A stretch of DNA of 58,706 nucleotides, filler included, from Dugesia japonica (Eukaryota), in NCBI GenBank assembly GCA_001938525.1. It is 5 parts of 5 records of this genome, joined end to end, with 100 filler letters (N's around TTAATTAATTAA, not from the genome) between each part and the next. Parts side by side here need not be neighbours in the genome. Positions count along the whole stretch, not along the records: positions 1 to 11,054 come from MQRL01626412.1; 4 more parts are not named here. One strand, given 5' to 3'. The stretch's first letter is position 1, and every line of letters starts with the position of its first letter. Positions 1 through 11,054 of the stretch are shown here, one piece after another. The notes beneath the pieces are model-generated. The model ran no database searches and was not told the DNA's origin. It was given only the letters and a program-made list of their open reading frames with translations. The position numbers and the translations under genes are program-made.

Positions 1-45
1 AGAAACATTGAAATATAATAATAATTTAAAATCAATCAATTATAC

Positions 46-431
46 CTAAACGTTTTAAATTTCTCGCCACATTAGGCAAACCTTGATCCGCATCCATATT
101 TCCACCAGAAGACATAACTTGATTAATGGGTATATTTTGAACATCAGACATATTTGGGATAACCATGTTTTGATTAAGCATAGATTGATTAACTGGTATT
201 TTGGATAATAAAACATATTTTGATAATGTATATTTGCAACAGCCATAATTTGATAAGGCATACCTTGATTAACTGGTAAATTTTGGTAATATAGTATATT
301 TTGATAATACATGGCTTGAGCAATATTCATATTATGATAATACATTTTTGGAATGGCATATTTTAAGCAGCATTCATAATTGGAATGGTAATGCTATTTT
401 CATAAGTCATATTTTGATTATTATTTTGCAT
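46..431 (-). pseudogene. Q/N/Y/M-rich low-complexity repeat protein, probably an accessory gene of the Polinton-like element
   Basis: ATG at 431 gives MQNNNQNMTYENS..*NMPFQKMYYHNMNIAQAMYYQNILYYQNLPVNQGMPYQ..., then after one frameshift IPVNQSMLNQNMVIPNMSDVQNIPINQVMSSGGNMDADQGLPNVARNLKRL, ending at a G|GTATAA donor. Upstream TATATAAA (529-522) and a 46-nt GTAAGA..TTTAG 5'UTR intron (489-444). Confidence 0.55.
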
Positions 432-1481
432 TTTAATATAAATCTAAATTAAAAAATAAAAATTAATAATAAATTTAAAAATGTCTTACTGTTCAAAGTT
501 TTTCTAGGATTATGTGCTTCGTTTATATACCAAATGGTTACATAATTGAAACAGATAGTTTAAATTAAAATTGAAACGATAAAACAAAAACATTTTTGGT
601 ATCGTTTTCTTAATAATAATAATTTAATTAACATTTAAATAATTTATACTTACTAGGTTCATATATTATTTACATTTTTTTTCTTCACCAAAGATATTTA
701 TTTCTAAATAATTTTACTAAATGAAAATTAAATTAATTTAAATAAATTAAAAATAAAACAAAATTCAATAGACTAAAACTTTACAATAAAAAACTTATAT
801 TTACATTAAAAATTTGATTTACCATAAAAATTACAATAAAACTTAACAATAAAAAATATTCATATTAAAACATTTACACAGTAAAAATTACAAATTAAAT
901 AAGTAACACGTTTTTTATTCAATACATTTATTCAATACAAAATTTCATCAACCATGTTTATTAGTTAAATTTAAAGTCTCACATGTCTCCATAAATTGTT
1001 TATCGATTATTACAAGTCTTTTCTTAAAAAATAAAAATATGAAATAACAATTTACAAATTTCAAACAAATAATCTGAGAAATCTTAATAAAATATTTTTC
1101 AAAAATATTGGTTTTTTAAATTCCAAAATANNNNNNNNNNNNNNNNNNNNNNNNNNNNNNNNNNNNNNNNNNNNNNNNNNNNNNNNNNNNNNNNNNNNNN
1201 NNNNNNNNNNNNNNNNNNNNNNNNNNNNNNNNNNNNNNNNNNNNNNNNNNNNNNNNNNNNNNNNNNNNNNNNNNNNNNNNNNNNNNNNNNNNNNNNNNNN
1301 NNNNNTTTTACATATATATTTATTTATTTTTCAACCTTATAATTTTTAAAATTTTATATTTTAAAAATTTTTAAAAAACGAATCTTAATATTAAATATAA
1401 AAATTAAAAAATCTCAGACATCCGAAATTAATGAATCGATACTCACAATGTTGATTTTTTTTCAGCATATTTGATACTTTT

Positions 1482-1727
1482 TCAGAATATTTCTTCATCC
1501 GCTATATTGTTTTGCAACCATAATAAGCAAAGCGGACCGCAATTCATAGAGAGTAATTTCTGGTACTGGGTTCTATTGTAAATGATAGGTTTGGATAAAC
1601 TCGATAGTTGCGATACTAGTATTGATGGGTAGTAAAATCCGAATGGATCAAATACTATGATATGTTCAGGTTTATGATAAACAGATAACCAATGTTCACC
1701 TCCGAGATTTGAGCTCTGTGTGTTTAC
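1482..1727 (-). pseudogene. Adenain-like (C5) cysteine protease of Polinton/Maverick type, 5'-truncated
   Basis: Manual translation VNTQSSNLGGEHWLSVYHKPEHIIVFDPFGFYYPSIL...YNRTQYQKLLSMNCGPLCLLWL shows the His (GEHW), Asp (FDPFG), Gln and Cys (CG) catalytic motifs. Not in the ORF track. Confidence 0.85.
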
Positions 1728-2099
1728 TCTTTAATCTTTAATCTCTCTTTAATCTCCATAAACGGTATTTAGTATTACAAGTGTATTTGATTAAAATAAA
1801 AATATTAAGAATAATTCATAGTATTCAAACAAATAATCTGAGAAATTTTTCAATAAAATAATAAATAATAAGTATTTTACTTTACATAAAAACTTATAAA
1901 ATATTTAAAAAATATTAACTTCCATTAAATAAATTTTATGTAATATAAGAATTTCATAAATATTTTACCTAATAATTTCAATAAATAAATTGTTTGAAAT
2001 ATTTCATTTTACTTATGTTTTAAAAATAAATTTTAATATTATATATATATTTAAAAATTAAAGAAAGATTTCTCAGATATTTAAATCTATGAATAATTC

Positions 2100-2510
2100 T
2101 TACAAATATAACCAAATATTGAACATTTAAATTACGTGTTCTATGATCACCATCTTGATGGAATAGATTTTGTTTAATGAATATTACAGTAACACCACAA
2201 TGTCTTGATATTTTTGTGAATAAATTATTAAAATCCTTTTCTTTATTAGCTTCTTGATACAGATCATCAACAACAATCANATCACCTGTTTTCGATTTCT
2301 TACTCCAATTGTCATCAAATTCATTATTAATTGTAATTTTTATATCGTAAAATGCTGATTGAGTCATTCCATGCTCCTCATCTGCACTTCTATGCCAATA
2401 TATTTTATTGAATTTCGATTTGAATAAGTTTGATTTCAACAATTTACATACAAACAACGTTTTTCCATTACCACTAGATCCCACAATTTTAAACGTATCA
2501 ATTGAATTAA
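2100..2510 (-). pseudogene. A32/FtsK-like DNA packaging ATPase of Polinton/Maverick type, N-terminal two thirds
   Basis: Walker A GSSGNGKT, Walker B IVVDDL, LFTKISRH, and QNLF..RTRNLNVQYLVIF motifs; similarity ends near 2100, where the sequence becomes AT-rich. Confidence 0.85.
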
Positions 2511-2559
2511 TATTGTTTAAATGGGTATAAATACCACTTTGAAAAAGAATTATTCATAA

Positions 2560-3022
2560 ATGATGATTGCAAATAATAATTAGAGGAAGAGTTGATCAAG
2601 AAGAGACCAGGAAAATGAGATTTCCGTGTGGAAAACCTGTTCAGGTAGTAGAGAAAACAGACAAGTATACCCTTGTTTTCTTTCAATCAGGAAGTTGTAG
2701 AATCATAGTTTGTAAGAAACCAATAAGACCAAAGGATTTAAAGTATAATATCCAGAATATTCAATTACAATCACTTATAGTTGTCCATGATTTGAGAACT
2801 ATGATTAATTTATCTGAATTATCCAAAGTAATCAAATGCATCTATGAACCAGAAATATTTCCAGGATTGAGAATTTCCAAATATTTTCCAATATGTGTTA
2901 ATTTATTTTCAAGTGGACAGATAGTAAAAGGTGGAATAAAATTATTTTATTGTCAATCAATTGTTAATGAAATATTAAACGAATTAATTAATTTAATTAA
3001 TAATTTAAAAACCGTTGTTTAA
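2560..3022 (+). CDS. Compact TATA-binding protein (TBP/TRF)-like protein inside the Polinton-like element; possibly frameshifted near its start
   Basis: Two TBP-like repeats: YTLVFFQSGSCRIIVCK (cf. TTALIFSSGKMVCTGAK) and IQLQSLIVVHDL..INLSEL..YEPEIFPGLR..CVNLFSSGQIVKGGIK (cf. IQNMVGSCDV..IRLEGL..YEPELFPGL..LLIFVSGKVVLTGAK). Intronless; ATG at 2560 is out of frame with the 2567-3022 ORF. Confidence 0.8.
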
Positions 3023-3072
3023 ATTAAGTCATTGTAAGCATTATACACTTTTCAAAATTGTATGATGTATTT

Positions 3073-3803
3073 ATGTCAGAAAAACTGAAGGAAATGTTGA
3101 ATGAAAAAGAACTATTTAATCAAGATGTTGTTATCGATGATGATGATGAATACATGATATCTTTCATGGCATGGAAGAACTATATTTCCAAAAATTATTT
3201 CAGAGACTCAAGGTTGTTTATCTTTGAATTATGAAGATTATCTCAACAAATGTAAAGTTGATCTTGCCAATAATCTGGCAAATTTATTCCTTATTGATCC
3301 ATTTATCGATGCAATGGTGGAAATATCAAACAATGAAATTATACTTTACCATCATGAATAAGAAGAAATATTACAAAGCGGTCTACAAGCTCTTATTCAA
3401 ATTCAATTTCTCGATAGCCTTGTAATACTCAGAAGAATAGAGTTAATAGATAAACTGAAATATAATCCAGATTCATTGAAAAACATGAAATTTCTCATGA
3501 ATAATTTAGTTAAATTTCATAATCTCGAATTGTCAACGGTTGCAAATAAGTTTTATGAGAACTCAAAAGAATCATTAATTAAAGAATACAATGATGATTT
3601 AAGTTATTCAAGTCCAGAATCAATAAATCAAGCTCAAATGAATATAAAACAGAAGGCATTATAGCAGCAGGGATGCAAAATAGAAAGAGATCCAAATACT
3701 TTAAGTAATATTTGTCTTTTTAATAATCTATTTTAATATTATAATTTCAGTGGCCAATTGTCATACTGAACAATCAATGGAATATCGAGTAATATGGGAT
3801 TGA
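3073..3803 (+). pseudogene. ORF-X: orphan gene of the Polinton-like element with a 46-nt intron (3705-3750)
   Basis: MSEKLKEMLNEKELFNQDVVIDDDDEYMISFMAWK...LQALIQIQFLDSL...CKIERDPNTL|MANCHTEQSMEYRVIWD*; stops and a frameshift; homologous to 46120-46845. Confidence 0.6.
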
Positions 3804-4699
3804 ATTAAATAAAATTTACTGTTTTAAACCTGTTTTTATTTATAAAAGTAATAAAATTAACAAAGTAGAAATAAATAAGATAAGACGTTTATTTATACTA
3901 ATATTTATTCAATAAATTTTCATTCAATGTTTTGAGTTGATTTAACTTTCCATATTGGCTTTACTGTTTCTTCCAATTTCTTGTATCCAATTATTTCCAC
4001 TGTAATCTTTGATTTACTTTCTTGAACATTATTTTCTTTAGATTTATAAAGTTTGTTGATTTTAGGTTAATATATTTGTATTTAGTGAAAAATTACCAGC
4101 CGAATAGTATAAATTTCGATAAATTTTGATGTACTTTTGATATTTTCGAAAAATGTCACCGAATTCCGGGAGGGTGGCTGTAAATATTCGTTAGGAAGCA
4201 TTTTTTCCGAGTCAATATTTTAACTTCGCGCAGTCACGTTTTCCTTCTGAGTAAAATAATACCAAATTTGAGTCAATAGCTGTAATCTGGACACAGAGTT
4301 CTGAGCACTAAACTCTGAATTTTGAAATTTTTTCACTACCAAACCTCATTTATTTCATCAAGTATTAGTTTTGGTGATTTTAGGTTAACATATTTAAAAT
4401 CAGTGAAAAGTTCTCTATCGAATAGACAGGTTCTTGACCTATTTTGAGAAGAAAATATTTTTTCGAAAAAATCCTGTGCAAAATACTGGGAAAACCAAAA
4501 ATTATCGCCGTAAAATTCTGAGTCGATATATCTAAAAATAACTATATGTTATAAAAAATTGAAAAATTATTTTTAAAATTTTTGATTCTCCGGATTCCCA
4601 TAAAAAATTGATTTAAAACTTTTTTTAAATTTTCATATTATTTAAGCAACATGAACGGTTTGTCGGATTCCTATAAAAAATTCCCATAAAAATGTTTTT

Positions 4700-4890
4700 C
4701 CCTTATAAAAAGCCTAAAAAATATTACCGCTTAAAAAGCCTAAAAAATATTTCCCAATTAAATACACAGGAAAAAAGTAACACCAGTTAATCCTATTACG
4801 CTAAATTTCACCGATGAAATTAATCTTATGACATAATTTGTGTGCAAAATATTTTCCCAANTAAATACACAGGGAAAAAGTAACACCAAA
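4700..4890. repeat. Short local direct repeats
   Basis: TAAAAAGCCTAAAAAATATT twice (about 4706 and 4732); TTTCCCAAnTAAATACACAGG(A/G)AAAAAGTAACACCA twice (about 4750 and 4853). Confidence 0.7.
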
Positions 4891-5097
4891 TTATGTAATA
4901 ATCTTGAAATTAATTACATTATGTAATGCATACAAATGTGTGCCACCGCCTATTTACATAAGAAAAATACTATGTCACTTATGAAATAATCTTATTACGT
5001 AAACGGGGCGGGGGCTTACTGAATGTGTGTGATGTTGTCCGCCACTATCCATCTACTTCCAACCAAAAAGGGGCGTGAAACGAGCGAAGACCAAAAG

Positions 5098-5388
5098 ATG
5101 ACCCAGGATTTATACCGTCTCGCCAAACGTCGCTGGGAGACCAATACCACTATCGCAGAGCGCAAAGTTAAGCGGTACAAATTTATATGCAGTGCCTTCC
5201 GTAAGGAAGCTGAGGCCTCTCACGCTCAGGAGCGGCTTTGGAAAAGCCAAATTGATTCATTAGCTGAGATCATATGTTCCCTCCATGACCGTGAAAATAA
5301 ACTGGTTACCGACATTTTGGCATTAAGAAAGGCCATGCCACTCAAGCCACTGATGATAGATAAGGCGATACAAATCTCGCGATTATGA
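5098..5388 (+). CDS. Hypothetical basic/coiled-coil protein in a GC-enriched island
   Basis: Open frame of about 97 codons (121 aa from the upstream ATG at 5023) at noticeably higher GC than the flanks; basic N-half followed by a heptad-like hydrophobic repeat. Confidence 0.35.
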   Translation: MTQDLYRLAKRRWETNTTIAERKVKRYKFICSAFRKEAEASHAQERLWKSQIDSLAEIICSLHDRENKLVTDILALRKAMPLKPLMIDKAIQISRL

Positions 5389-5519
5389 CTTTCAGCATCT
5401 CCCCTTGTAAATTTGTAAATAAAAATTGATCAAATCAAACGACATAGCTTTTGTGGCTCCCTTTATTTACATTATACTTAATTTTATTAATTAATTGTTC
5501 CAACTTTCTTCTAATAGAA

Positions 5520-5900
5520 TTGATGTTAATTGTTTCAGTGCCACGAATCCAGCTTCCGACTAGCTTGCGCCGTTGCCATCGTCTGATACAGAAACTGTTG
5601 CTCGAGAGACATAATAAACGCCATAATGAGTGCGCAATTTTAAGACATCTCACCCAAAGAAACCGATTAATTAAGAAATTAGACATCATAGTCAAAAAAC
5701 AAGGCGATTTAGCCGAACAAACAAAAAAAGTTCTCCAGCACAAAATCGCATTCCTAGAGCAATAAATTGCTGACCTTGCCAGTCGTCTTGAGCCACAGAC
5801 ATGGACTCGCTGGAATAGCGGGGACGATCAAGCCGCTTTTGGTTTCATCCCTGAAGAGCCAACCCAGTGGTTATACCCGGGTGCTCTGGATTTTATGTAG
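5520..5900 (+). pseudogene. Hypothetical coiled-coil/leucine-zipper protein with one internal stop
   Basis: ...KKVLQHKIAFLEQ*IADLASRLEPQTWTRWNSGDDQAAFGFIPEEPTQWLYPGALDFM*; Leu heptad continues across the stop at 5763-5765. Confidence 0.35.
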
Positions 5901-6129
5901 TTAATTAGAAATAAATTTTTAATTCTAGTACATTATTAATTCGGTTTTGATAAATTAAATTATAGGGAAAATAAGGAACCCGAAAATAAAGGTATATGAG
6001 TGTGTACTTCAAATAAATGATGGAAGTCAACCGCTCTATACTGAAGACATAATAAGGAGCATTAGGTAAATTCTTGAAAGGGTTTCCTTAGTGCCTTTTT
6101 TCCCAGCCAACTTTTTTCTATCACAAACT

Positions 6130-7393
6130 CAGGTAGGACCCAAACAATATATAATAGCTCCAATCTCTTTCTCTTCAAAATTTCTGCTTTCATCCTGTTT
6201 CATATCGACATAACCATATGCTAGATTGTCTAATTTATTTTCTTCATGAATACACTGAACCTTTCTTGTGTTATGTCGTAATAAGCTGCAATTATTAAAA
6301 AAAATGATTGTCCATACCACATATCAAATAACACTTATTCAAAGGACAGTTTTTTCTGGTATGACTGGACTCACCACAACAATAACATTCTCCTGGTTGA
6401 AGTCGTCATAATTCGGGTTCGGGTAACCCTTTCGCTCTATTATATACTCTTTTTGCTATATGCTTCATGGAAACCATAGGTCTTTGGGGCTTATCGTATT
6501 CATTCGACCTCTTCATAGGTTGTCTTCTCTCTGAATCTTGCAGTTCTCTATTTAAGTTGGAATACTACCTCCCTTGATTATTTACCGATTGTTTGATTAC
6601 CTGTGGTACATTGTGTCTAATTGACCTTATAATACCTGTTACTGCTGCGTATTTTGGCTTAAATTCTCTTTTGCTATCTTCAATTACAATAATTTCTGAC
6701 TTTTCTTCAATACTTATTGAATTTTCAAAATTTGTCGTCAATTTCTCAACTTCTTCCAAGGACATATCTGGGTTCATTGCTATTGACTCCTTTACTTTCT
6801 TGGAGGACATTCGTTTTGAAATTATATCCTTCACGATCATGTCTTTTGTTTACTTCACCGACAAATCTTTTCTTACCAACTTCCTCACTCTTATAGCAAA
6901 ATTTTCAAACCTTTCATTTGATCGTTGATTAACTTGGCTAAAATCGTTGATCTTTTGCAAAAATGTTTTCGACTTGATGTAATTTGAACTGCACCAATTT
7001 TTTGTATCTTCAACTGACAGAATTTTTATTTTTTCTTTGAAGGCTATCCATAATTTCTTCGCGTCACCGAGCACCAATAGATCAAATTCTGCACATAAAT
7101 TTAAAGAACTTGTGGTTACAAAATCTTCAATTGATTGTAGCCACTCTTTCCCATCTTCTTCCTTGTAGCCAAAAAACTTTTTTATTATTGGATAAATTGA
7201 TTCTTGAATATTTTTTGGCAACAATTCTAAAATTTCCATCCGCTGCTGCTCTTTGTGAGAACTGTGATTTCGGCGTATTCGCAAGTTACAATACCAGCTT
7301 AACTCATTAAACTAAAATACAAATACGCTTTTCAAAATTTATTACAAAACACTTTTTTGAATATTTAAACAACAATATTATCTTATTGTTACT
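6130..7393 (-). mobile_element. Ty3/gypsy LTR retrotransposon remnant: short 5' LTR (about 7283-7393) and decayed gag
   Basis: Gag ORFs 6850-7284 and 6565-6840 are similar to the gag at 41.3-42.4 kb (FDLLV/L..ERFENFAIRVR vs ERFATFEIRLR); frameshifted double CCHC knuckle at about 6280-6390; AGTTAC..GTTACT ends. Confidence 0.75.
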
Positions 7394-7904
7394 ATGTATG
7401 CTTTTCAGATAATTTAACTGCAGAAATTTGAGTTTAAATTACTTTAAATATGATTTTCTTGTTTCATCTTCGAATAATTTTCCGGCTTTTACTTAATGTT
7501 GAATTAAATTTATGATGATTAATATAATAAGTATCATTAATTTATTACAAATGTAATGTAATGAATTTAAATTTCAAATAATTTCTTAAAATTTTATGTG
7601 TTGACATTGAACTTTAATGTTCTCAGGGAGCAACTAATATAAAGTACTTGTTTTTCAATTTATTTCATCGAGGATACAGATTGACAATTGTTAACCATGT
7701 TTTTGTTACCCGTCGTAAAATTGTCAATTTAATAGATACTTTGATGGTAAAAACTGAAGGATAAAAATTTTTTCGAATATTCAGTGTTCTTAAATAAACC
7801 TATGTAAAAATACCACTGTAAAATTCAGATATAAAAAATTTAATACCATCAAGGAAAAATTCTAAAATAAATCTATTAAAAATATTATATAGTAACTTAA
7901 ATTA

Positions 7905-8270
7905 AATTAGACGCAATATCTTTTCTCATATACGACGGAAAACCTTGGTCCATATGCTATAACAACTTCCATACCCTCATGTTATTAGTTCAATACAGCA
8001 CCAATTCCATTAAAAAACGGACCTTAGTATCCAGAATGAATTGACTTTCTGAGTTAGGATACTCTAATATTGAAGAGTTACAAAGGGCTTCTTTGATTTT
8101 AGCAAAACTCATCTCGCATTTAGTTGTCTGCACTATCTTGTGCTTTGATCTTCGATAACAGTATATATAGGTGTAGAAAGTTGCGAATTTTTTTTTATGA
8201 ATTTCCTGTGATAGTTTGCTATTCTAAGAAAAGATCGCGACTGTTTAGTAAATTTCCAACTCATATAGTC
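7905..8270 (-). mobile_element. Ty3/gypsy pol remnant (RT thumb/connection-RNase H)
   Basis: RSFLRIANYHRKFI...FAKIKEALCNSSILEYPNSESQFILDT..GIGAVL..EVVIAYG..EKRYCV, with frameshifts. Confidence 0.75.
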
Positions 8271-9294
8271 AAAGGGGTTGATTCAGTGCGTCGTTATCTA
8301 CATATTTAATTTAAATTATTTTGCCTGGAGAACGAAATATTTTTCTATAGTAGCCTTTTAGGCAATATATAGTCAGTTTTAATTCACCATCGTAGGAAAC
8401 TAATTTCGAAATGAAAAATAAAATTTTAAAATGTTTTGACGAAGAAAAGAAATAATAAATAAATACAATAAAATTAGCTTCCAGCGTCCTCTTTTGAGGA
8501 CACGCTTTATAATTTTTCTAGTACTCTACTTAAACCCTATTCCATTCTAATTTTAGAATAAGAATAATAAACAATAATAGTCAGGAGTATAAAATGTCCT
8601 CATCCTAAAAACCCATGGTTCTGCAGGAAGCTCTTCTCTAAGAGCTTCTTTATATTTTGCTTTTGTTTTATTGTTGTCTGCTCTTTCTTTTCTATATTTT
8701 TCTAATGTTAAGGCTCGTTGTTTTCTGATTCCTTACTTTTTTCATAATAACAATATGCAGCTACTCTTAAAAATTTTTAAAAAATAATTCATCCCTTGTG
8801 TGTTGACACATAAATTTTCAAATAATATTTTATGTATATTCCTTATTTGGAGATTATTTGAGAAAGTGCTCGATAAATTACAATTTTTTATTCTTCTACT
8901 ATCTCAAGTATTTAACTCATTTTAAAATATAAATTAAGTTCTTCTATATCAAATATTAGATATTTTTTATACATTGTTTCAATATCTAATATTTACTTTC
9001 TAGGATTATCTATTTGTTCATTTATTAATTTACTTAATTTTTCATTCTCTTCCGCAATACTTGGTTTAATTTGATTTTTTTAAATCAAATTTTCACTGGA
9101 TATTTTGCTCCTTCTATTTGGTTTTTCTTATAGATAATTAGAAAATGTTTACTGTATTGCACTGTACTTTTCGCTTTTACTGTAATATTTACTGTTTGTT
9201 GTAATTATTAATTTTCGCCATTTTGGAAAATTTTCATTATTGTTGAAAATATGATAAAAAAAATTTAAATTCCGAGATAACAAAACTTCGCAAT

Positions 9295-10404
9295 TTAGCA
9301 ATTTTAATGAAAAATGACTCTTATAGGAGTATTTTATTAAAAATCACAAAGACAGAATGTTATGTAAGAGTTTAGTCACTGTTCCCTTATCCTTGAAAGA
9401 AACAAGATTATTTCCTGTAGACAGATTATTAAAAATTTGAAGGCCGATTTTGAACTCATTGCGCTAAAATCTTACATGAAAACCAAATTTCTTCTTTAGA
9501 TAAGTTATTGATATCTAAACTTTTGACCAACAGCTTTTCGAAATTGTGCGGGTGACATGCGTCTAAAGCCAGTTGAGCGCCTCATCAATTGAGCATAGCT
9601 TTGGATGATTAAGCTGTTTGGATGCAGCATGAATTAGATCATTTTTAGCTATATCCCTAACTATTACATCTCGACAAACAAGCATTTTGAATTCCTGAAT
9701 GATTGATTGTATAATATACTCATCTCTAGCTTCATTTAACCCAACTGCTTCATGTTTTTTGGAGCTGTATAGGTATTCAAAAGCAGCGTTCAGTAGGATA
9801 GATAGAATTTATCTAACCTGTTCCCTGGTATATCTATCAATCCCTTTAGGTCTAAGCACCACTCCATTTGCAGTGTAGGCCGAAGCATCAAACTTACTGA
9901 CTGGAATGTTGAAGTTCCTAAAGGCAAAAGTAAACCTCGAATGAATGAAGCCTTTATATGCATGGATTTTCTGCCAAGGATAGAGAATAGATTTAGTGAT
10001 CTTCTCCACATATCTGACATATTTTTCAAGCATGTCTGATGGAGTCTGAAACTGACCCCGTCCGAAATCAACCCCAAGATAACGATAAAAATCCTTATTT
10101 AAGAGTTGAGGAATGCTTTCATCTCTGATTTCAATCTGCACAAGTGAACTATTTTCCGGACAAGGAAGATAAACACACTTATTCGGACGAAACTCTAAGG
10201 AATACCAGTCAGCCAAGCGAACGGCAACGTTAATCATGTCCTGAAATGAGGCTTTTGAAGAAGCGACCAACGCAAGATCATCCACATAAGCTAAGGCAGA
10301 GATGGGATGACGAGCACAATTAACTCGCCTTCCACGAGTCGTTGAGATTTCCTTAATGACTGGGTCAATGCCAATGTTAAAAAAAACACTGACAATGAGC
10401 AACC
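9295..10404 (-). mobile_element. Non-LTR retrotransposon reverse transcriptase fragment (R2/NeSL-like RLE group)
   Basis: FNIGIDPVI..ALAYVDDLAL..FRPNKC..YRYLGV..LYPWQKI motifs in ORF 9809-10411. Confidence 0.85.
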
Positions 10405-11054
10405 TTAGCAATTTTAATGAAAAATGACTCTTATAGGAGTATTTTATTAAAAATCACAAAGACAGAATGTTATGTAAGAGTTTAGTCACTGTTCCCTTAT
10501 CCTTGAAAGAAACAAGATTATTTCCTGTAGACAGATTATTAAAAATTTGAAGGCCGATTTTGAACTCATTGCGCTAAAATCTTACATGAAAACCAAATTT
10601 CTTCTTTAGATAAGTTATTGATATCTAAACTTTTGACCAACAGCTTTTCGAAATTGTGCGGGTGACATGCGTCTAAAGCCAGTTGAGCGCCTCATCAATT
10701 GAGCATAGCTTTGGATGATTAAGCTGTTTGGATGCAGCATGAATTAGATCATTTTTAGCTATATCCCTAACTATTACATCTCGACAAACAAGCATTTTGA
10801 ATTCCTGAATGATTGATTGTATAATATACTCATCTCTAGCTTCATTTAACCCAACTGCTTCATGTTTTTTGGAGCTGTATAGGTATTCAAAAGCAGCGTT
10901 CAGTAGGATAGATAGAATTTATCTAACCTGTTCCCTGGTATATCTATCAATCCCTTTAGGTCTAAGCACCACTCCATTTGCAGTGTAGGCCGAAGCATCA
11001 AACTTACTGACTGGAATGTTGAAGTTCCTAAAGGCAAAAGTAAACCTCGAATGA
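10405..11054. repeat. Apparently identical direct duplicate of 9295-9944, ending at a scaffold gap
   Basis: Same sequence at an offset of 1110 bp. Confidence 0.9.

What the first reader, a model, noticed from the sequence alone, without database searches (positions are those of the whole stretch)
1482..3803. Polinton/Maverick-like endogenous virus carrying its own TBP homologue
Seen: an intronless 151-aa ORF with both TBP repeats sits head-to-head with a Polinton packaging ATPase, near an adenain protease, and directly upstream of ORF-X, which is also in the second viral copy. Known: the canonical Polinton/Maverick gene set is pPolB, integrase, ATPase, protease and two capsid proteins; TBP homologues are described in large Nucleocytoviricota, and I do not know them as a standard gene of animal Mavericks. 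Inference: this lineage captured a basal transcription factor and may use it to drive viral promoters or act as a decoy for host TFIID/TFIIB.
Basis: partly seen in the sequence, partly recalled or inferred. Interest (0 to 1): 0.92.

Follow-up and report, generated by a model that had tools for sequence, protein, structure and literature searches.

The report
Decayed Maverick fragment with minimal viral TBP
The window holds a broken, internally deleted remnant of an adintovirus/Maverick-type DNA virus whose lineage regularly carries its own stripped-down TATA-binding protein, a gene noted once in the literature but never characterised.

Summary
Window 2567-3022(+) encodes a genuine TBP homologue (Pfam TBP E=5e-8). 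It lies head-to-head with a Pox_A32-type packaging ATPase remnant, near an adenain-like fragment, and upstream of a conserved ORF-X.

The copy is a relic of about 2.5 kb (1482-4045). The integrase-to-capsid block is deleted, and the ATPase, TBP gene and ORF-X are all broken. An intact relative (L001, 83% nt identity) has the same ATPase<>TBP>ORF-X order.

The gene is not a chance retrocopy. Short TBPs of about 150 aa occur in at least 13 independent Polinton-like contigs carrying PolB, rve integrase, ATPase and capsid genes. They form over 100 clusters at 50% identity and are under purifying selection (dN/dS 0.13-0.16).

The AlphaFold model (pLDDT 96) is a two-lobed TBP saddle. The N-lobe has lost almost all of helix H1 and all of H2. 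Three DNA-kinking Phe residues and the TFIIB-contact motif are near-invariant; the fourth Phe (position 21) is F in 29/37 and its assignment is uncertain.

In close relatives, TATAAACA boxes sit about 35-50 nt before the ATPase, capsid and core-protein genes, only on that strand. The TBP genes themselves have canonical TATA boxes.

Best reading, inferred and not shown: a virus-encoded initiation factor for the structural-gene promoters. Starrett et al. 2021 already label a "TBP" gene in such viruses, so this is a new variant of a known kind.

The parts
1482..1727 (-). C-terminal fragment of the adenain-like protease gene (broken: N-terminal part missing)
   Evidence: Pfam Peptidase_C5 E=0.002, 18.2 bits, below the cut-off. 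tblastn gives 52-56% identity to the ORF that follows the capsid gene in L004, L005-7 and L008.
2104..2496 (-). Remnant of the Pox_A32/FtsK-type packaging ATPase gene. It is broken: no in-frame ATG start, the C-terminal third is missing, and there is one ambiguous base. The open frame spans 2023-2553.
   Evidence: Walker A and Walker B motifs. Pox_A32 E=4e-4. 87% aa identity to residues 9-138 of the 206-aa ATPase of L001. dN/dS 0.165 against L001.
2497..2559 (.). Divergent intergenic promoter region, with a canonical TATAAATA box at 2526-2533(+) and a TCA-type initiator-like site just before the TBP start
   Evidence: Sequence. The same layout lies upstream of the TBP genes of L001, L002, L008 and L022, and TATATAAG is found in L017, L018 and L010.
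2560..3022 (+). Viral short-TBP gene (broken: one frameshift).
   Evidence: Pfam TBP E=4.9e-8. PDB TBPs E=1e-8. 84% aa identity to the intact 153-aa P0001 of L001. Family profile against PDB TBPs E=1.5e-19. AF2 model of P0001 pLDDT 96.4. Foldseek top 44 hits are all TBPs.
3064..3712 (+). ORF-X, an accessory gene of unknown function (broken: one frameshift, two premature stops)
   Evidence: 68-77% aa identity to the intact 229-aa ORF of L001. Only six homologues in 5.8 billion proteins. No Pfam or PDB hit. AF2 pLDDT 40, all-helical, uninformative.
3908..4045 (-). Remnant of the 83-aa ORF that follows ORF-X in L001 (N-terminal half missing). It marks the right end of detectable element homology.
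   Evidence: tblastn 59% identity to residues 43-83. The blastn alignment of window 2104-4007 to L001 4262-6211 is 83% identical.

Best explanation
Window 1482-4045 is a decayed, internally deleted endogenous copy of an adintovirus/Maverick-type (Polinton-like) dsDNA virus. Its lineage encodes a minimal TATA-binding protein ('vTBP', about 150 aa).

Shown: vTBP is a true TBP homologue that folds into a two-lobed saddle. The C-lobe is a complete TBP repeat. It keeps both DNA-kinking phenylalanines and the acidic YEPE[LI]F stirrup motif, which in cellular TBP contacts TFIIB. The N-lobe keeps the beta-sheet and at least one kinking Phe, but has lost almost all of helix H1 and all of helix H2. In cellular TBP these helices form part of the convex surface used by TBP regulators.

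Inferred: in an active virus, host TBP and Pol II transcribe the vTBP gene from its canonical TATA + initiator promoter. vTBP then binds the virus-specific TATAAACA boxes about 35-50 nt before the ATPase, core-protein and capsid genes, and recruits host TFIIB and Pol II there. It would do so independently of TFIID and out of reach of the regulators that use the N-lobe helices. This would make it a functional analogue of the herpesvirus late-gene TBP mimic.

The copy in this window can no longer do any of this.
For: Homology and fold:
- Pfam TBP above the cut-off for the window ORF, P0001, L035 and L043.
- Profile against PDB TBPs E=1.5e-19.
- hhalign against a cellular TBP alignment: probability 99.3%, 155 columns across both repeats.
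- AF2 pLDDT 96.4, pTM 0.86, with no long helix in the N-lobe.
- Foldseek top 44 PDB hits are all TBPs, TM 0.62-0.75.

Conserved residues in 37 diverse members:
- F41, F100, F116 and E98 in 37/37; E96 in 34/37; [LI]99 in 36/37.
- Median pI is 9.5.

Viral ownership:
- The gene lies beside the ATPase in L001, L004, L005-7, L008, L017, L032, L033 and L035.
- It lies beside the protease in L023, L027/28, L043 and L088.
- PolB and rve integrase are on the same contigs.
- 113 of the best 150 clusters at 50% identity carry the family motifs.
- dN/dS is 0.13-0.16 between intact copies.

Promoters:
- TATAAACA occurs 8 times in L001 (expected 1.0; 0 of 200 shuffles reach 8) and 10 times in L005 (expected 1.9).
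- All 18 occurrences are on the strand of the structural gene block.
- TATAAAC lies at -33 to -49 of the start codon for the ATPase in 6/7 contigs and the capsid gene in 5/5 contigs of the close clade.
- TATAAA is followed by CA 55 times out of 231, against about 13 expected from base composition.
- No TBP gene of the adintovirus-like contigs (L001-L035) has TATAAAC in that position; the one hit, L049, has no element core gene. Canonical TATA boxes occur upstream of 7 TBP genes of the short-TBP set L001-L035 (one search counts 16/57 over all fetched loci, many of them giant-virus or unplaced contigs).
Against: - There is no binding, transcript or structural data. The link between vTBP and TATAAACA is a correlation within one clade.
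- More diverged vTBP-bearing elements (L035, L043, L088) show no TATAAAC before their ATPase or capsid genes.
- ATAAACA also fits the forkhead-type RYAAAYA site, so a host factor could read the motif.
- By alignment, only 1 of the 4 central minor-groove contact residues of cellular TBP (yeast N69, T124, N159, T215; from memory of the TBP-DNA structures) is kept. The vTBP equivalents are N4, M49, S71 and V/L124. DNA recognition may therefore differ strongly or be weak.
- The equivalent of the first N-lobe Phe is uncertain: it could be F21 or P26, in a low-confidence alignment region.
- With the box about 35 nt from the ATG, the leaders would be only a few nucleotides long.
Confidence: 0.45

Rival explanations
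1. vTBP is a decoy or competitor rather than an activator. It occupies host TATA boxes or titrates TFIIB (or the Pol III factor Brf) without supporting full pre-initiation complex assembly, which would damp host transcription or host defence genes.
For: The TFIIB-contact motif is kept, while the N-lobe helices that form part of TBP's regulator- and cofactor-binding convex surface are gone. Accessory genes in related elements target host pathways: Bcl-2 in L005-7 and a TRAF/MATH protein in L004.
Against: A decoy does not explain the strand-specific, positionally fixed TATAAACA boxes before the structural genes. The invariant kinking Phe residues suggest productive DNA bending.
Confidence: 0.2
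2. vTBP is a general transcription booster that binds ordinary TATA boxes like host TBP. The TATAAACA motif would be read by something else, for example a host forkhead-type factor, or simply by host TBP.
For: ATAAACA fits the RYAAAYA forkhead-type site (from memory). Diverged vTBP-bearing elements lack the motif. Giant-virus TBP homologues are usually regarded as general factors (one search lists them as the nearest viral folds).
Against: The central DNA-contact residues differ from cellular TBP at 3 of 4 aligned positions. The diverged lobe is the one that in cellular TBP contacts the 3' half of the box, which is exactly where TATAAACA departs from the canonical box (inference from the known TBP-DNA orientation).
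Confidence: 0.2
3. The protein uses a TBP fold for a non-transcriptional DNA task, for example binding genome termini or assisting packaging. This would explain why it sits next to the packaging ATPase.
For: Divergent gene pair with the ATPase in 8 independent contigs. The central base contacts have been altered.
Against: In other lineages the gene sits next to the protease instead (L023, L027, L043, L088), so linkage to the ATPase is not fixed. The TFIIB-contact motif is near-invariant. All strong structural matches are transcription-factor TBPs.
Confidence: 0.08
4. The ORF is a chance host TBP retrocopy or a spurious ORF inside a dead transposon.
For: The window copy is frameshifted and lies in a TE-rich, 24% GC region.
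Against: Orthologues lie at conserved positions in at least 13 element contigs, and 19 ORFs of 136-187 aa read open in relatives (17 of them from an ATG). dN/dS is well below 1. The family-specific N-lobe architecture is absent from cellular TBPs.
Confidence: 0.02

Closest known systems
Cellular TATA-binding protein (TBP; eukaryotic and archaeal, PF00352)
   Same: Two-lobed saddle fold. The C-terminal repeat aligns end to end. The kinking Phe residues, the YEPE[LI]FPGL-type stirrup and the SGK-x-V-x-x-G-x-K strand motifs are shared, and the protein is basic.
   Different: About 150 aa instead of a 180-aa core. The N-lobe lacks almost all of H1 and all of H2. Three of the four central minor-groove contact positions are replaced. 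Identity to cellular TBPs is 20-26%. There is no N-terminal low-complexity domain. The gene is encoded in virus-like elements.
'TBP' gene labelled on maps of MELD viruses with adintovirus-like PolB (Starrett et al. 2021, Virus Evol 7:veaa055; PMC8502044)
   Same: A TBP-like gene in Polinton/adintovirus-type genomes, listed together with TRAF-like and other host-derived accessory genes. L004 here also carries a TRAF/MATH gene beside the TBP remnant.
   Different: That paper only names the gene in a figure legend, in the section on non-animal datasets. It gives no description of its architecture, distribution, position, selection or promoters. I could not see the figure, so I cannot say whether it is the same lineage.
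TBP homologues of Nucleocytoviricota (e.g. Heterosigma akashiwo virus, mimivirids, asfarvirus B263R-like)
   Same: Virus-encoded two-lobed TBP folds. They are the nearest hits in the viral structure library.
   Different: Only 10-18% identity. They are mostly larger (190-500 aa). Their viruses carry their own RNA polymerase and replicate in cytoplasmic factories. The elements here have no RNA polymerase gene on the contigs examined and would have to use the host Pol II.
Beta/gamma-herpesvirus late-gene TBP mimic (KSHV ORF24, EBV BcRF1, HCMV UL87; e.g. PMC12529657)
   Same: The proposed logic is the same: a virus-encoded TBP-like factor that reads a non-canonical TATA variant in front of late or structural genes and brings in host Pol II.
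   Different: The herpesvirus proteins are large, lack clear sequence similarity to TBP, and contact Pol II directly. Structural matches here are weak (TM 0.37-0.52). vTBP is a bona fide sequence homologue of TBP with the TFIIB-contact motif.
Poxvirus VITF-3 TBP/TFIIB-like heterodimer (PMC12917281)
   Same: A virus-encoded atypical TBP-like promoter recognition factor.
   Different: It works with the viral RNA polymerase and a TFIIB-like partner. ORF-X, the gene next to vTBP here, gave no detectable TFIIB/cyclin similarity.

Membership tests
TBP family (PF00352) | Sequence match above the curated Pfam threshold | tested here: met
   Window ORF 33.1 bits against a cut-off of 22.9. P0001 45.7 bits, L035 56.8 bits, L043 50.9 bits.
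TBP family (PF00352) | Two tandem repeats forming a pseudo-symmetric saddle | tested here: met
   The AF2 model (pLDDT 96) has two beta-sheet lobes. Foldseek aligns both lobes to solved TBPs (153-174 columns, TM 0.62-0.75). hhalign covers both repeats. Pfam and HMMER on their own detect only the C-terminal repeat.
TBP family (PF00352) | Each repeat has the S1-H1-S2-S3-S4-S5-H2 topology with two helices on the convex face | tested here: not met
   The N-lobe has only a 5-residue helix (13-17) in place of H1, and no H2. The C-lobe is complete.
TBP family (PF00352) | Two pairs of DNA-kinking phenylalanines (yeast F99/F116 and F190/F207; numbering from memory) | tested here: inconclusive
   The equivalents of F116, F190 and F207 are invariant (F41, F100, F116; 37/37). 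The F99 equivalent is ambiguous: F21 in 29/37 members, or P26 according to hhalign.
TBP family (PF00352) | Central minor-groove Asn/Thr quartet (yeast N69, T124, N159, T215; from memory) | tested here: not met
   By alignment the equivalents are N4 (34/37), M49 (37/37), S71 (33/37) and V/L at position 124. One of four is kept.
TBP family (PF00352) | C-terminal stirrup acidic residues that contact TFIIB (yeast E186, E188, L189; from memory) | tested here: met
   E96 in 34/37, E98 in 37/37, L/I99 in 36/37. The motif aligns to YEPELFPGL of a eukaryotic TBP. Actual TFIIB binding is not testable here.
Polinton/Maverick - adintovirus-like elements | Protein-primed family B DNA polymerase | tested here: not met
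   Absent from the window. Present in relatives that carry vTBP: L004, L005-7 and L008 (precomputed DNA_pol_B_2) and L035 (E=2e-21).
Polinton/Maverick - adintovirus-like elements | Retrovirus-type (rve) integrase | tested here: not met
   Deleted from the window copy. Present, with a weak chromodomain hit, in L001 (rve E=4e-11), L004, L005-7, L008 and L032.
Polinton/Maverick - adintovirus-like elements | FtsK/A32-type packaging ATPase | tested here: met
   The window remnant at 2104-2496 is 87% identical to the L001 ATPase. Pox_A32 E=4e-4 in the window and 9e-6 in L001.
Polinton/Maverick - adintovirus-like elements | Adenain-type cysteine protease | tested here: inconclusive
   The window fragment has His and Cys motifs but falls below the Pfam cut-off (18.2 vs 21.3 bits). 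It is conserved after the capsid gene in relatives.
Polinton/Maverick - adintovirus-like elements | Double jelly-roll major and minor capsid proteins | not tested
These genes are absent from the window.
Polinton/Maverick - adintovirus-like elements | Terminal inverted repeats | tested here: not met
   No long inverted repeats in window 1-11054. The fragment is truncated on both sides. Relatives were not tested because the contig ends were not held.

The most novel reading that the evidence does not exclude
vTBP is the smallest natural two-lobed TBP and a dedicated late-gene initiation factor of a large, mostly unsampled clade of adintovirus/Maverick-type viruses. Its remodelled N-lobe would read the non-canonical 3' half of a TATAAACA box. 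The conserved C-lobe would recruit host TFIIB and Pol II. The loss of the N-lobe helices would make it invisible to TFIID and to the negative regulators of TBP. This would be a second, independent invention of the herpesvirus 'viral TBP for late genes' strategy, built from a real TBP.
Probability: 0.3. Interest if true: 0.8.

Novelty: new variant of a known kind. Interest (0 to 1): 0.58.

Why it matters
How mid-sized nuclear dsDNA viruses and Maverick elements without their own RNA polymerase time their gene expression is largely unknown. A conserved, minimal TBP paired with a virus-specific TATA variant would give a simple two-tier transcription programme. It would also be a natural experiment showing which parts of TBP are dispensable for promoter recognition and TFIIB recruitment. 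In addition, the family gives a compact marker gene for finding this clade in genomes and metagenomes. For this particular locus the finding is only a fossil.

Tried and rejected
- **Alternative genetic codes:** the ciliate code and other codes were tried on the AT-rich window and told nothing. The standard code fits the homologues.
- **Public-collection scans with the 3-sequence alignment:** IMG/VR and the metagenome collection found nothing. With the 37-sequence alignment, IMG/VR gave only giant-virus TBPs, and the metagenome scan gave 80 loci.
- **Origin of the gene:** domain scores of the C-lobe are equal for archaeal and eukaryotic TBPs (43-44 bits). No tree was built because about 85 alignable residues would not resolve it. 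Host capture versus ancient viral gene stays open.
- **ORF-X as a TFIIB-like partner:** no Pfam or PDB hit and an unusable AF2 model. ORF-X homologues also occur without an adjacent TBP gene.
- **Host identity:** not obtainable. All family members checked come from metagenomes. The only clues are Bcl-2 and TRAF/MATH accessory genes in relatives, and an LTR-retroelement gag shared at 56% aa identity between the window and the flank of L004.
- **Wasted or empty literature searches:** one search was too broad to be useful. The supplementary files of Starrett et al. are not held.
- **dN/dS of the window against L001:** the value for TBP (0.44) mixes viral and post-integration neutral change, so the pairs of intact copies were used instead.
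Full report
**What is in the window**

The piece (1-11054) has about 24% GC and is rich in transposable elements.

- The frame 2567-3022(+) reads open for 151 codons. It matches Pfam TBP above the curated cut-off (E=4.9e-8) and solved TBP structures (E=1e-8).
- On the opposite strand, about 60-70 nt away, lies the N-terminal two-thirds of a Pox_A32/FtsK-type ATPase with Walker A and B motifs.
- At 1482-1727(-) there is an adenain-like fragment. Its Peptidase_C5 hit (E=0.002) is below the cut-off.
- ORF-X follows the TBP frame, split over more than one frame.

**An intact relative shows that the window copy is a relic**

The word-based protein search found only three relatives.

- The best, P0001 (153 aa, 84% identical), lies on a 6.6-kb metagenome contig, L001. 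All ten ORFs on that contig are intact. They include a partial capsid-like gene, an rve integrase with a weak chromodomain hit, two small basic proteins, a 206-aa ATPase, the TBP gene in divergent orientation, a 229-aa ORF-X and an 83-aa ORF.
- Window 2104-4007 aligns to L001 at 83% nucleotide identity.

Measured against L001 and the 16-kb contigs L005-7, the window copy shows the following damage:

- The TBP gene has one frameshift.
- ORF-X has one frameshift and two premature stops.
- The ATPase has no in-frame start and lacks its C-terminal third.
- The protease lacks its N-terminal part.
- The whole integrase-to-capsid block (about 6.5 kb in L005) is missing between the protease and the ATPase.
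- PolB is missing, and no terminal inverted repeats were found.

A third copy, L002, is also decayed: its TBP gene has one premature stop. The element remnant spans about 1482-4045.

**The TBP gene belongs to the virus and is widespread**

- The ATPase of L001 has 357 relatives in metagenomes.
- Every long contig of the close clade (ATPase at least 70% identical) that has enough upstream sequence carries a 144-153-aa TBP gene, or its remnant in L004, upstream of the ATPase. These are L004, L005-7, L008, L017 and L032. PolB is on L004, L005-7 and L008, integrase on all five, and Bcl-2 (L005-7) or TRAF/MATH (L004) accessory genes on two.
- More distant elements (ATPase 38-44% identical) also have the gene. 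It lies beside the ATPase in L033 and L035, the latter with a 1469-aa PolB. It lies beside the protease in L023, L027/28, L043 and L088.
- An exhaustive profile search found 112 clusters (at 50% identity) with E at or below 1e-10. Of the best 150 clusters, 113 carry the family-specific motifs.
- All clusters checked are known only from metagenomes. IMG auto-annotates some as TBP.
- Nineteen TBP ORFs of 136-187 aa read open in the fetched loci (17 from an ATG; the L027/L028 pair was not traced to its start).
- Pairs with dS of 1.2-1.5 give dN/dS of 0.13-0.16 (dS is close to saturation, so these are rough values).

A host retrocopy or a chance ORF is therefore excluded.

**Architecture**

With a 37-member alignment, AlphaFold2 gives a confident model of P0001 (pLDDT 96.4, pTM 0.86).

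- The C-lobe (residues about 62-152) is a complete TBP repeat with both helices.
- The N-lobe (residues 1-61) is a four-stranded sheet. It has only a 5-residue helix where H1 should be, and it has no H2.
- Foldseek returns only TBPs as its 44 significant PDB hits. Both lobes are aligned, with TM 0.62-0.75.
- hhalign against a cellular and archaeal TBP alignment gives 99.3% probability over 155 columns. The gaps fall exactly at H1 and H2 of repeat 1.

Column shares in the family:

- F41, F100, F116, E98, M49 and N114 are each 37/37.
- E96 is 34/37, L/I99 is 36/37, P26 is 36/37 and F21 is 29/37.
- Median pI is 9.5.

By alignment, F41, F100 and F116 correspond to three of the four DNA-kinking Phe residues of cellular TBP. 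E96-x-E98-[LI]99 corresponds to the stirrup residues that contact TFIIB. These assignments rest on my knowledge of the yeast and human TBP literature together with the alignments. Of the four central minor-groove contact residues, only the first Asn is kept.

In short, the protein looks like a DNA-bending, TFIIB-competent TBP. Its N-lobe has been stripped of its share of the convex surface that TBP regulators and cofactors bind (that partner assignment rests on general knowledge of TBP and was not checked here), and its base contacts have changed.

**Promoters**

In the close clade, TATAAA shows a sharp positional peak 31-40 nt before start codons. The box is usually extended to TATAAACA.

- TATAAA is followed by CA in 55 of 231 occurrences, against about 13 expected from base composition.
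- TATAAACA occurs 8 times in L001 (expected 1.0; no shuffle out of 200 reaches 8) and 10 times in L005 (expected 1.9). All 18 occurrences are on the strand of the ATPase-to-capsid block.
- TATAAAC lies at -33 to -49 of the ATG for the ATPase in 6/7 contigs, the capsid gene in 5/5 and a core-like protein in 3/7. It is not found before the integrase, the about 330-aa paralogues, the 114-aa gene or the protease.
- Several TBP genes instead have canonical boxes (TATAAATA, TATATAAG) at about -36 to -46 (seven of the short-TBP loci L001-L035 in the -65..-15 scan; the window and L002 boxes are seen), plus a TCA-type initiator-like site 8-20 nt before the ATG. The window keeps such a box at 2526-2533.

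This two-class layout is what suggests a cascade: host TBP transcribes vTBP, and vTBP then acts on the structural genes. The diverged N-lobe is the lobe that, in cellular TBP-DNA complexes, sits on the 3' half of the box, which is where TATAAACA departs from the canonical sequence. This last step is inference.

Caveats:

- L035, L043 and L088 have vTBP but no TATAAAC before their ATPase or capsid genes.
- The motif also fits a forkhead-type site.
- The contigs compared are related to one another, so the counts are not independent.

**Comparison with what is known**

- The only mention found of a TBP gene in Polinton/adintovirus-type genomes is the Fig. 5 legend of Starrett et al. [quoted passage not shown] There is no further description.
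- The nearest viral folds are giant-virus TBPs at 10-18% identity. Herpesvirus UL87/BcRF1-type mimics match only weakly.
- Functionally, the closest analogue of the proposed mechanism is the herpesvirus late-gene TBP mimic (PMC12529657, abstract seen).
- The origin of vTBP is unresolved. C-lobe domain scores are the same for archaeal and eukaryotic TBPs.

**ORF-X**

ORF-X remains of unknown function and is not always linked to vTBP.

**Verdict**

What appears to be new is:

- the breadth of the family;
- the minimal N-lobe architecture;
- the evidence of purifying selection;
- the contrast between the two promoter classes.

- No repaired, joined or consensus sequence was built or saved. Consensus lines printed by the alignment tools were not used.
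- I did not use these to mend anything, and this report gives counts only.
- Nothing in the window looked human.

Noticed in passing
window 9295-11054: An exact 1110-bp tandem duplication: 9295-9944 is identical to 10405-11054, and the second copy runs to the end of the piece. It includes a 59-aa ORF present twice and lies next to a non-LTR-type reverse transcriptase ORF (9809-10411, minus strand, YVDD motif). It could be a very recent duplication or an assembly artefact.
   Followed up: partly
window 6153-7254(-) and 7910-8255(-); L004 1-2988: An LTR-retroelement gag-like ORF and a pol fragment in the window are 48-57% aa identical to the retroelement that flanks the endogenous adintovirus-like copy in metagenome contig L004. 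This suggests that the two host genomes are related.
   Followed up: partly
window 1001-1085 and 1766-1849: Two short direct repeats (74-81% identical, spacing about 765 nt) bracket the protease fragment and the N-gap at 1131-1305. They may be traces of the rearrangement that removed the middle of the element.
   Followed up: no
L005 6353-9377; L001 1231-2271: Related elements carry three tandem paralogues of an about 330-345-aa gene (29-34% identical to each other and to the single 346-aa gene of L001) between the integrase and the capsid gene. There is no Pfam match, so these may be a vertex or fibre-type protein family that has expanded.
   Followed up: no
L010 36-971: In one short soil-metagenome contig, a diverged short-TBP gene lies directly after an ORF with a parvovirus-type phospholipase A2 domain (PF08398).
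   Followed up: no
L016, L020, L023, L026, L027, L031, L034 (about 55-75 nt upstream of the TBP start): A TGTTT[AT]A-type element (the reverse complement of a TAAACA core) recurs upstream of many TBP genes. This includes loci where no gene is read from the opposite strand. It may be a second regulatory site related to the TATAAACA box.
   Followed up: no
L035 7145-8005: A distant vTBP-bearing element encodes a KilA-N domain protein (E=7e-16), and its PolB carries N-terminal C2H2 zinc fingers and an Endonuclease VII-like segment.
   Followed up: no
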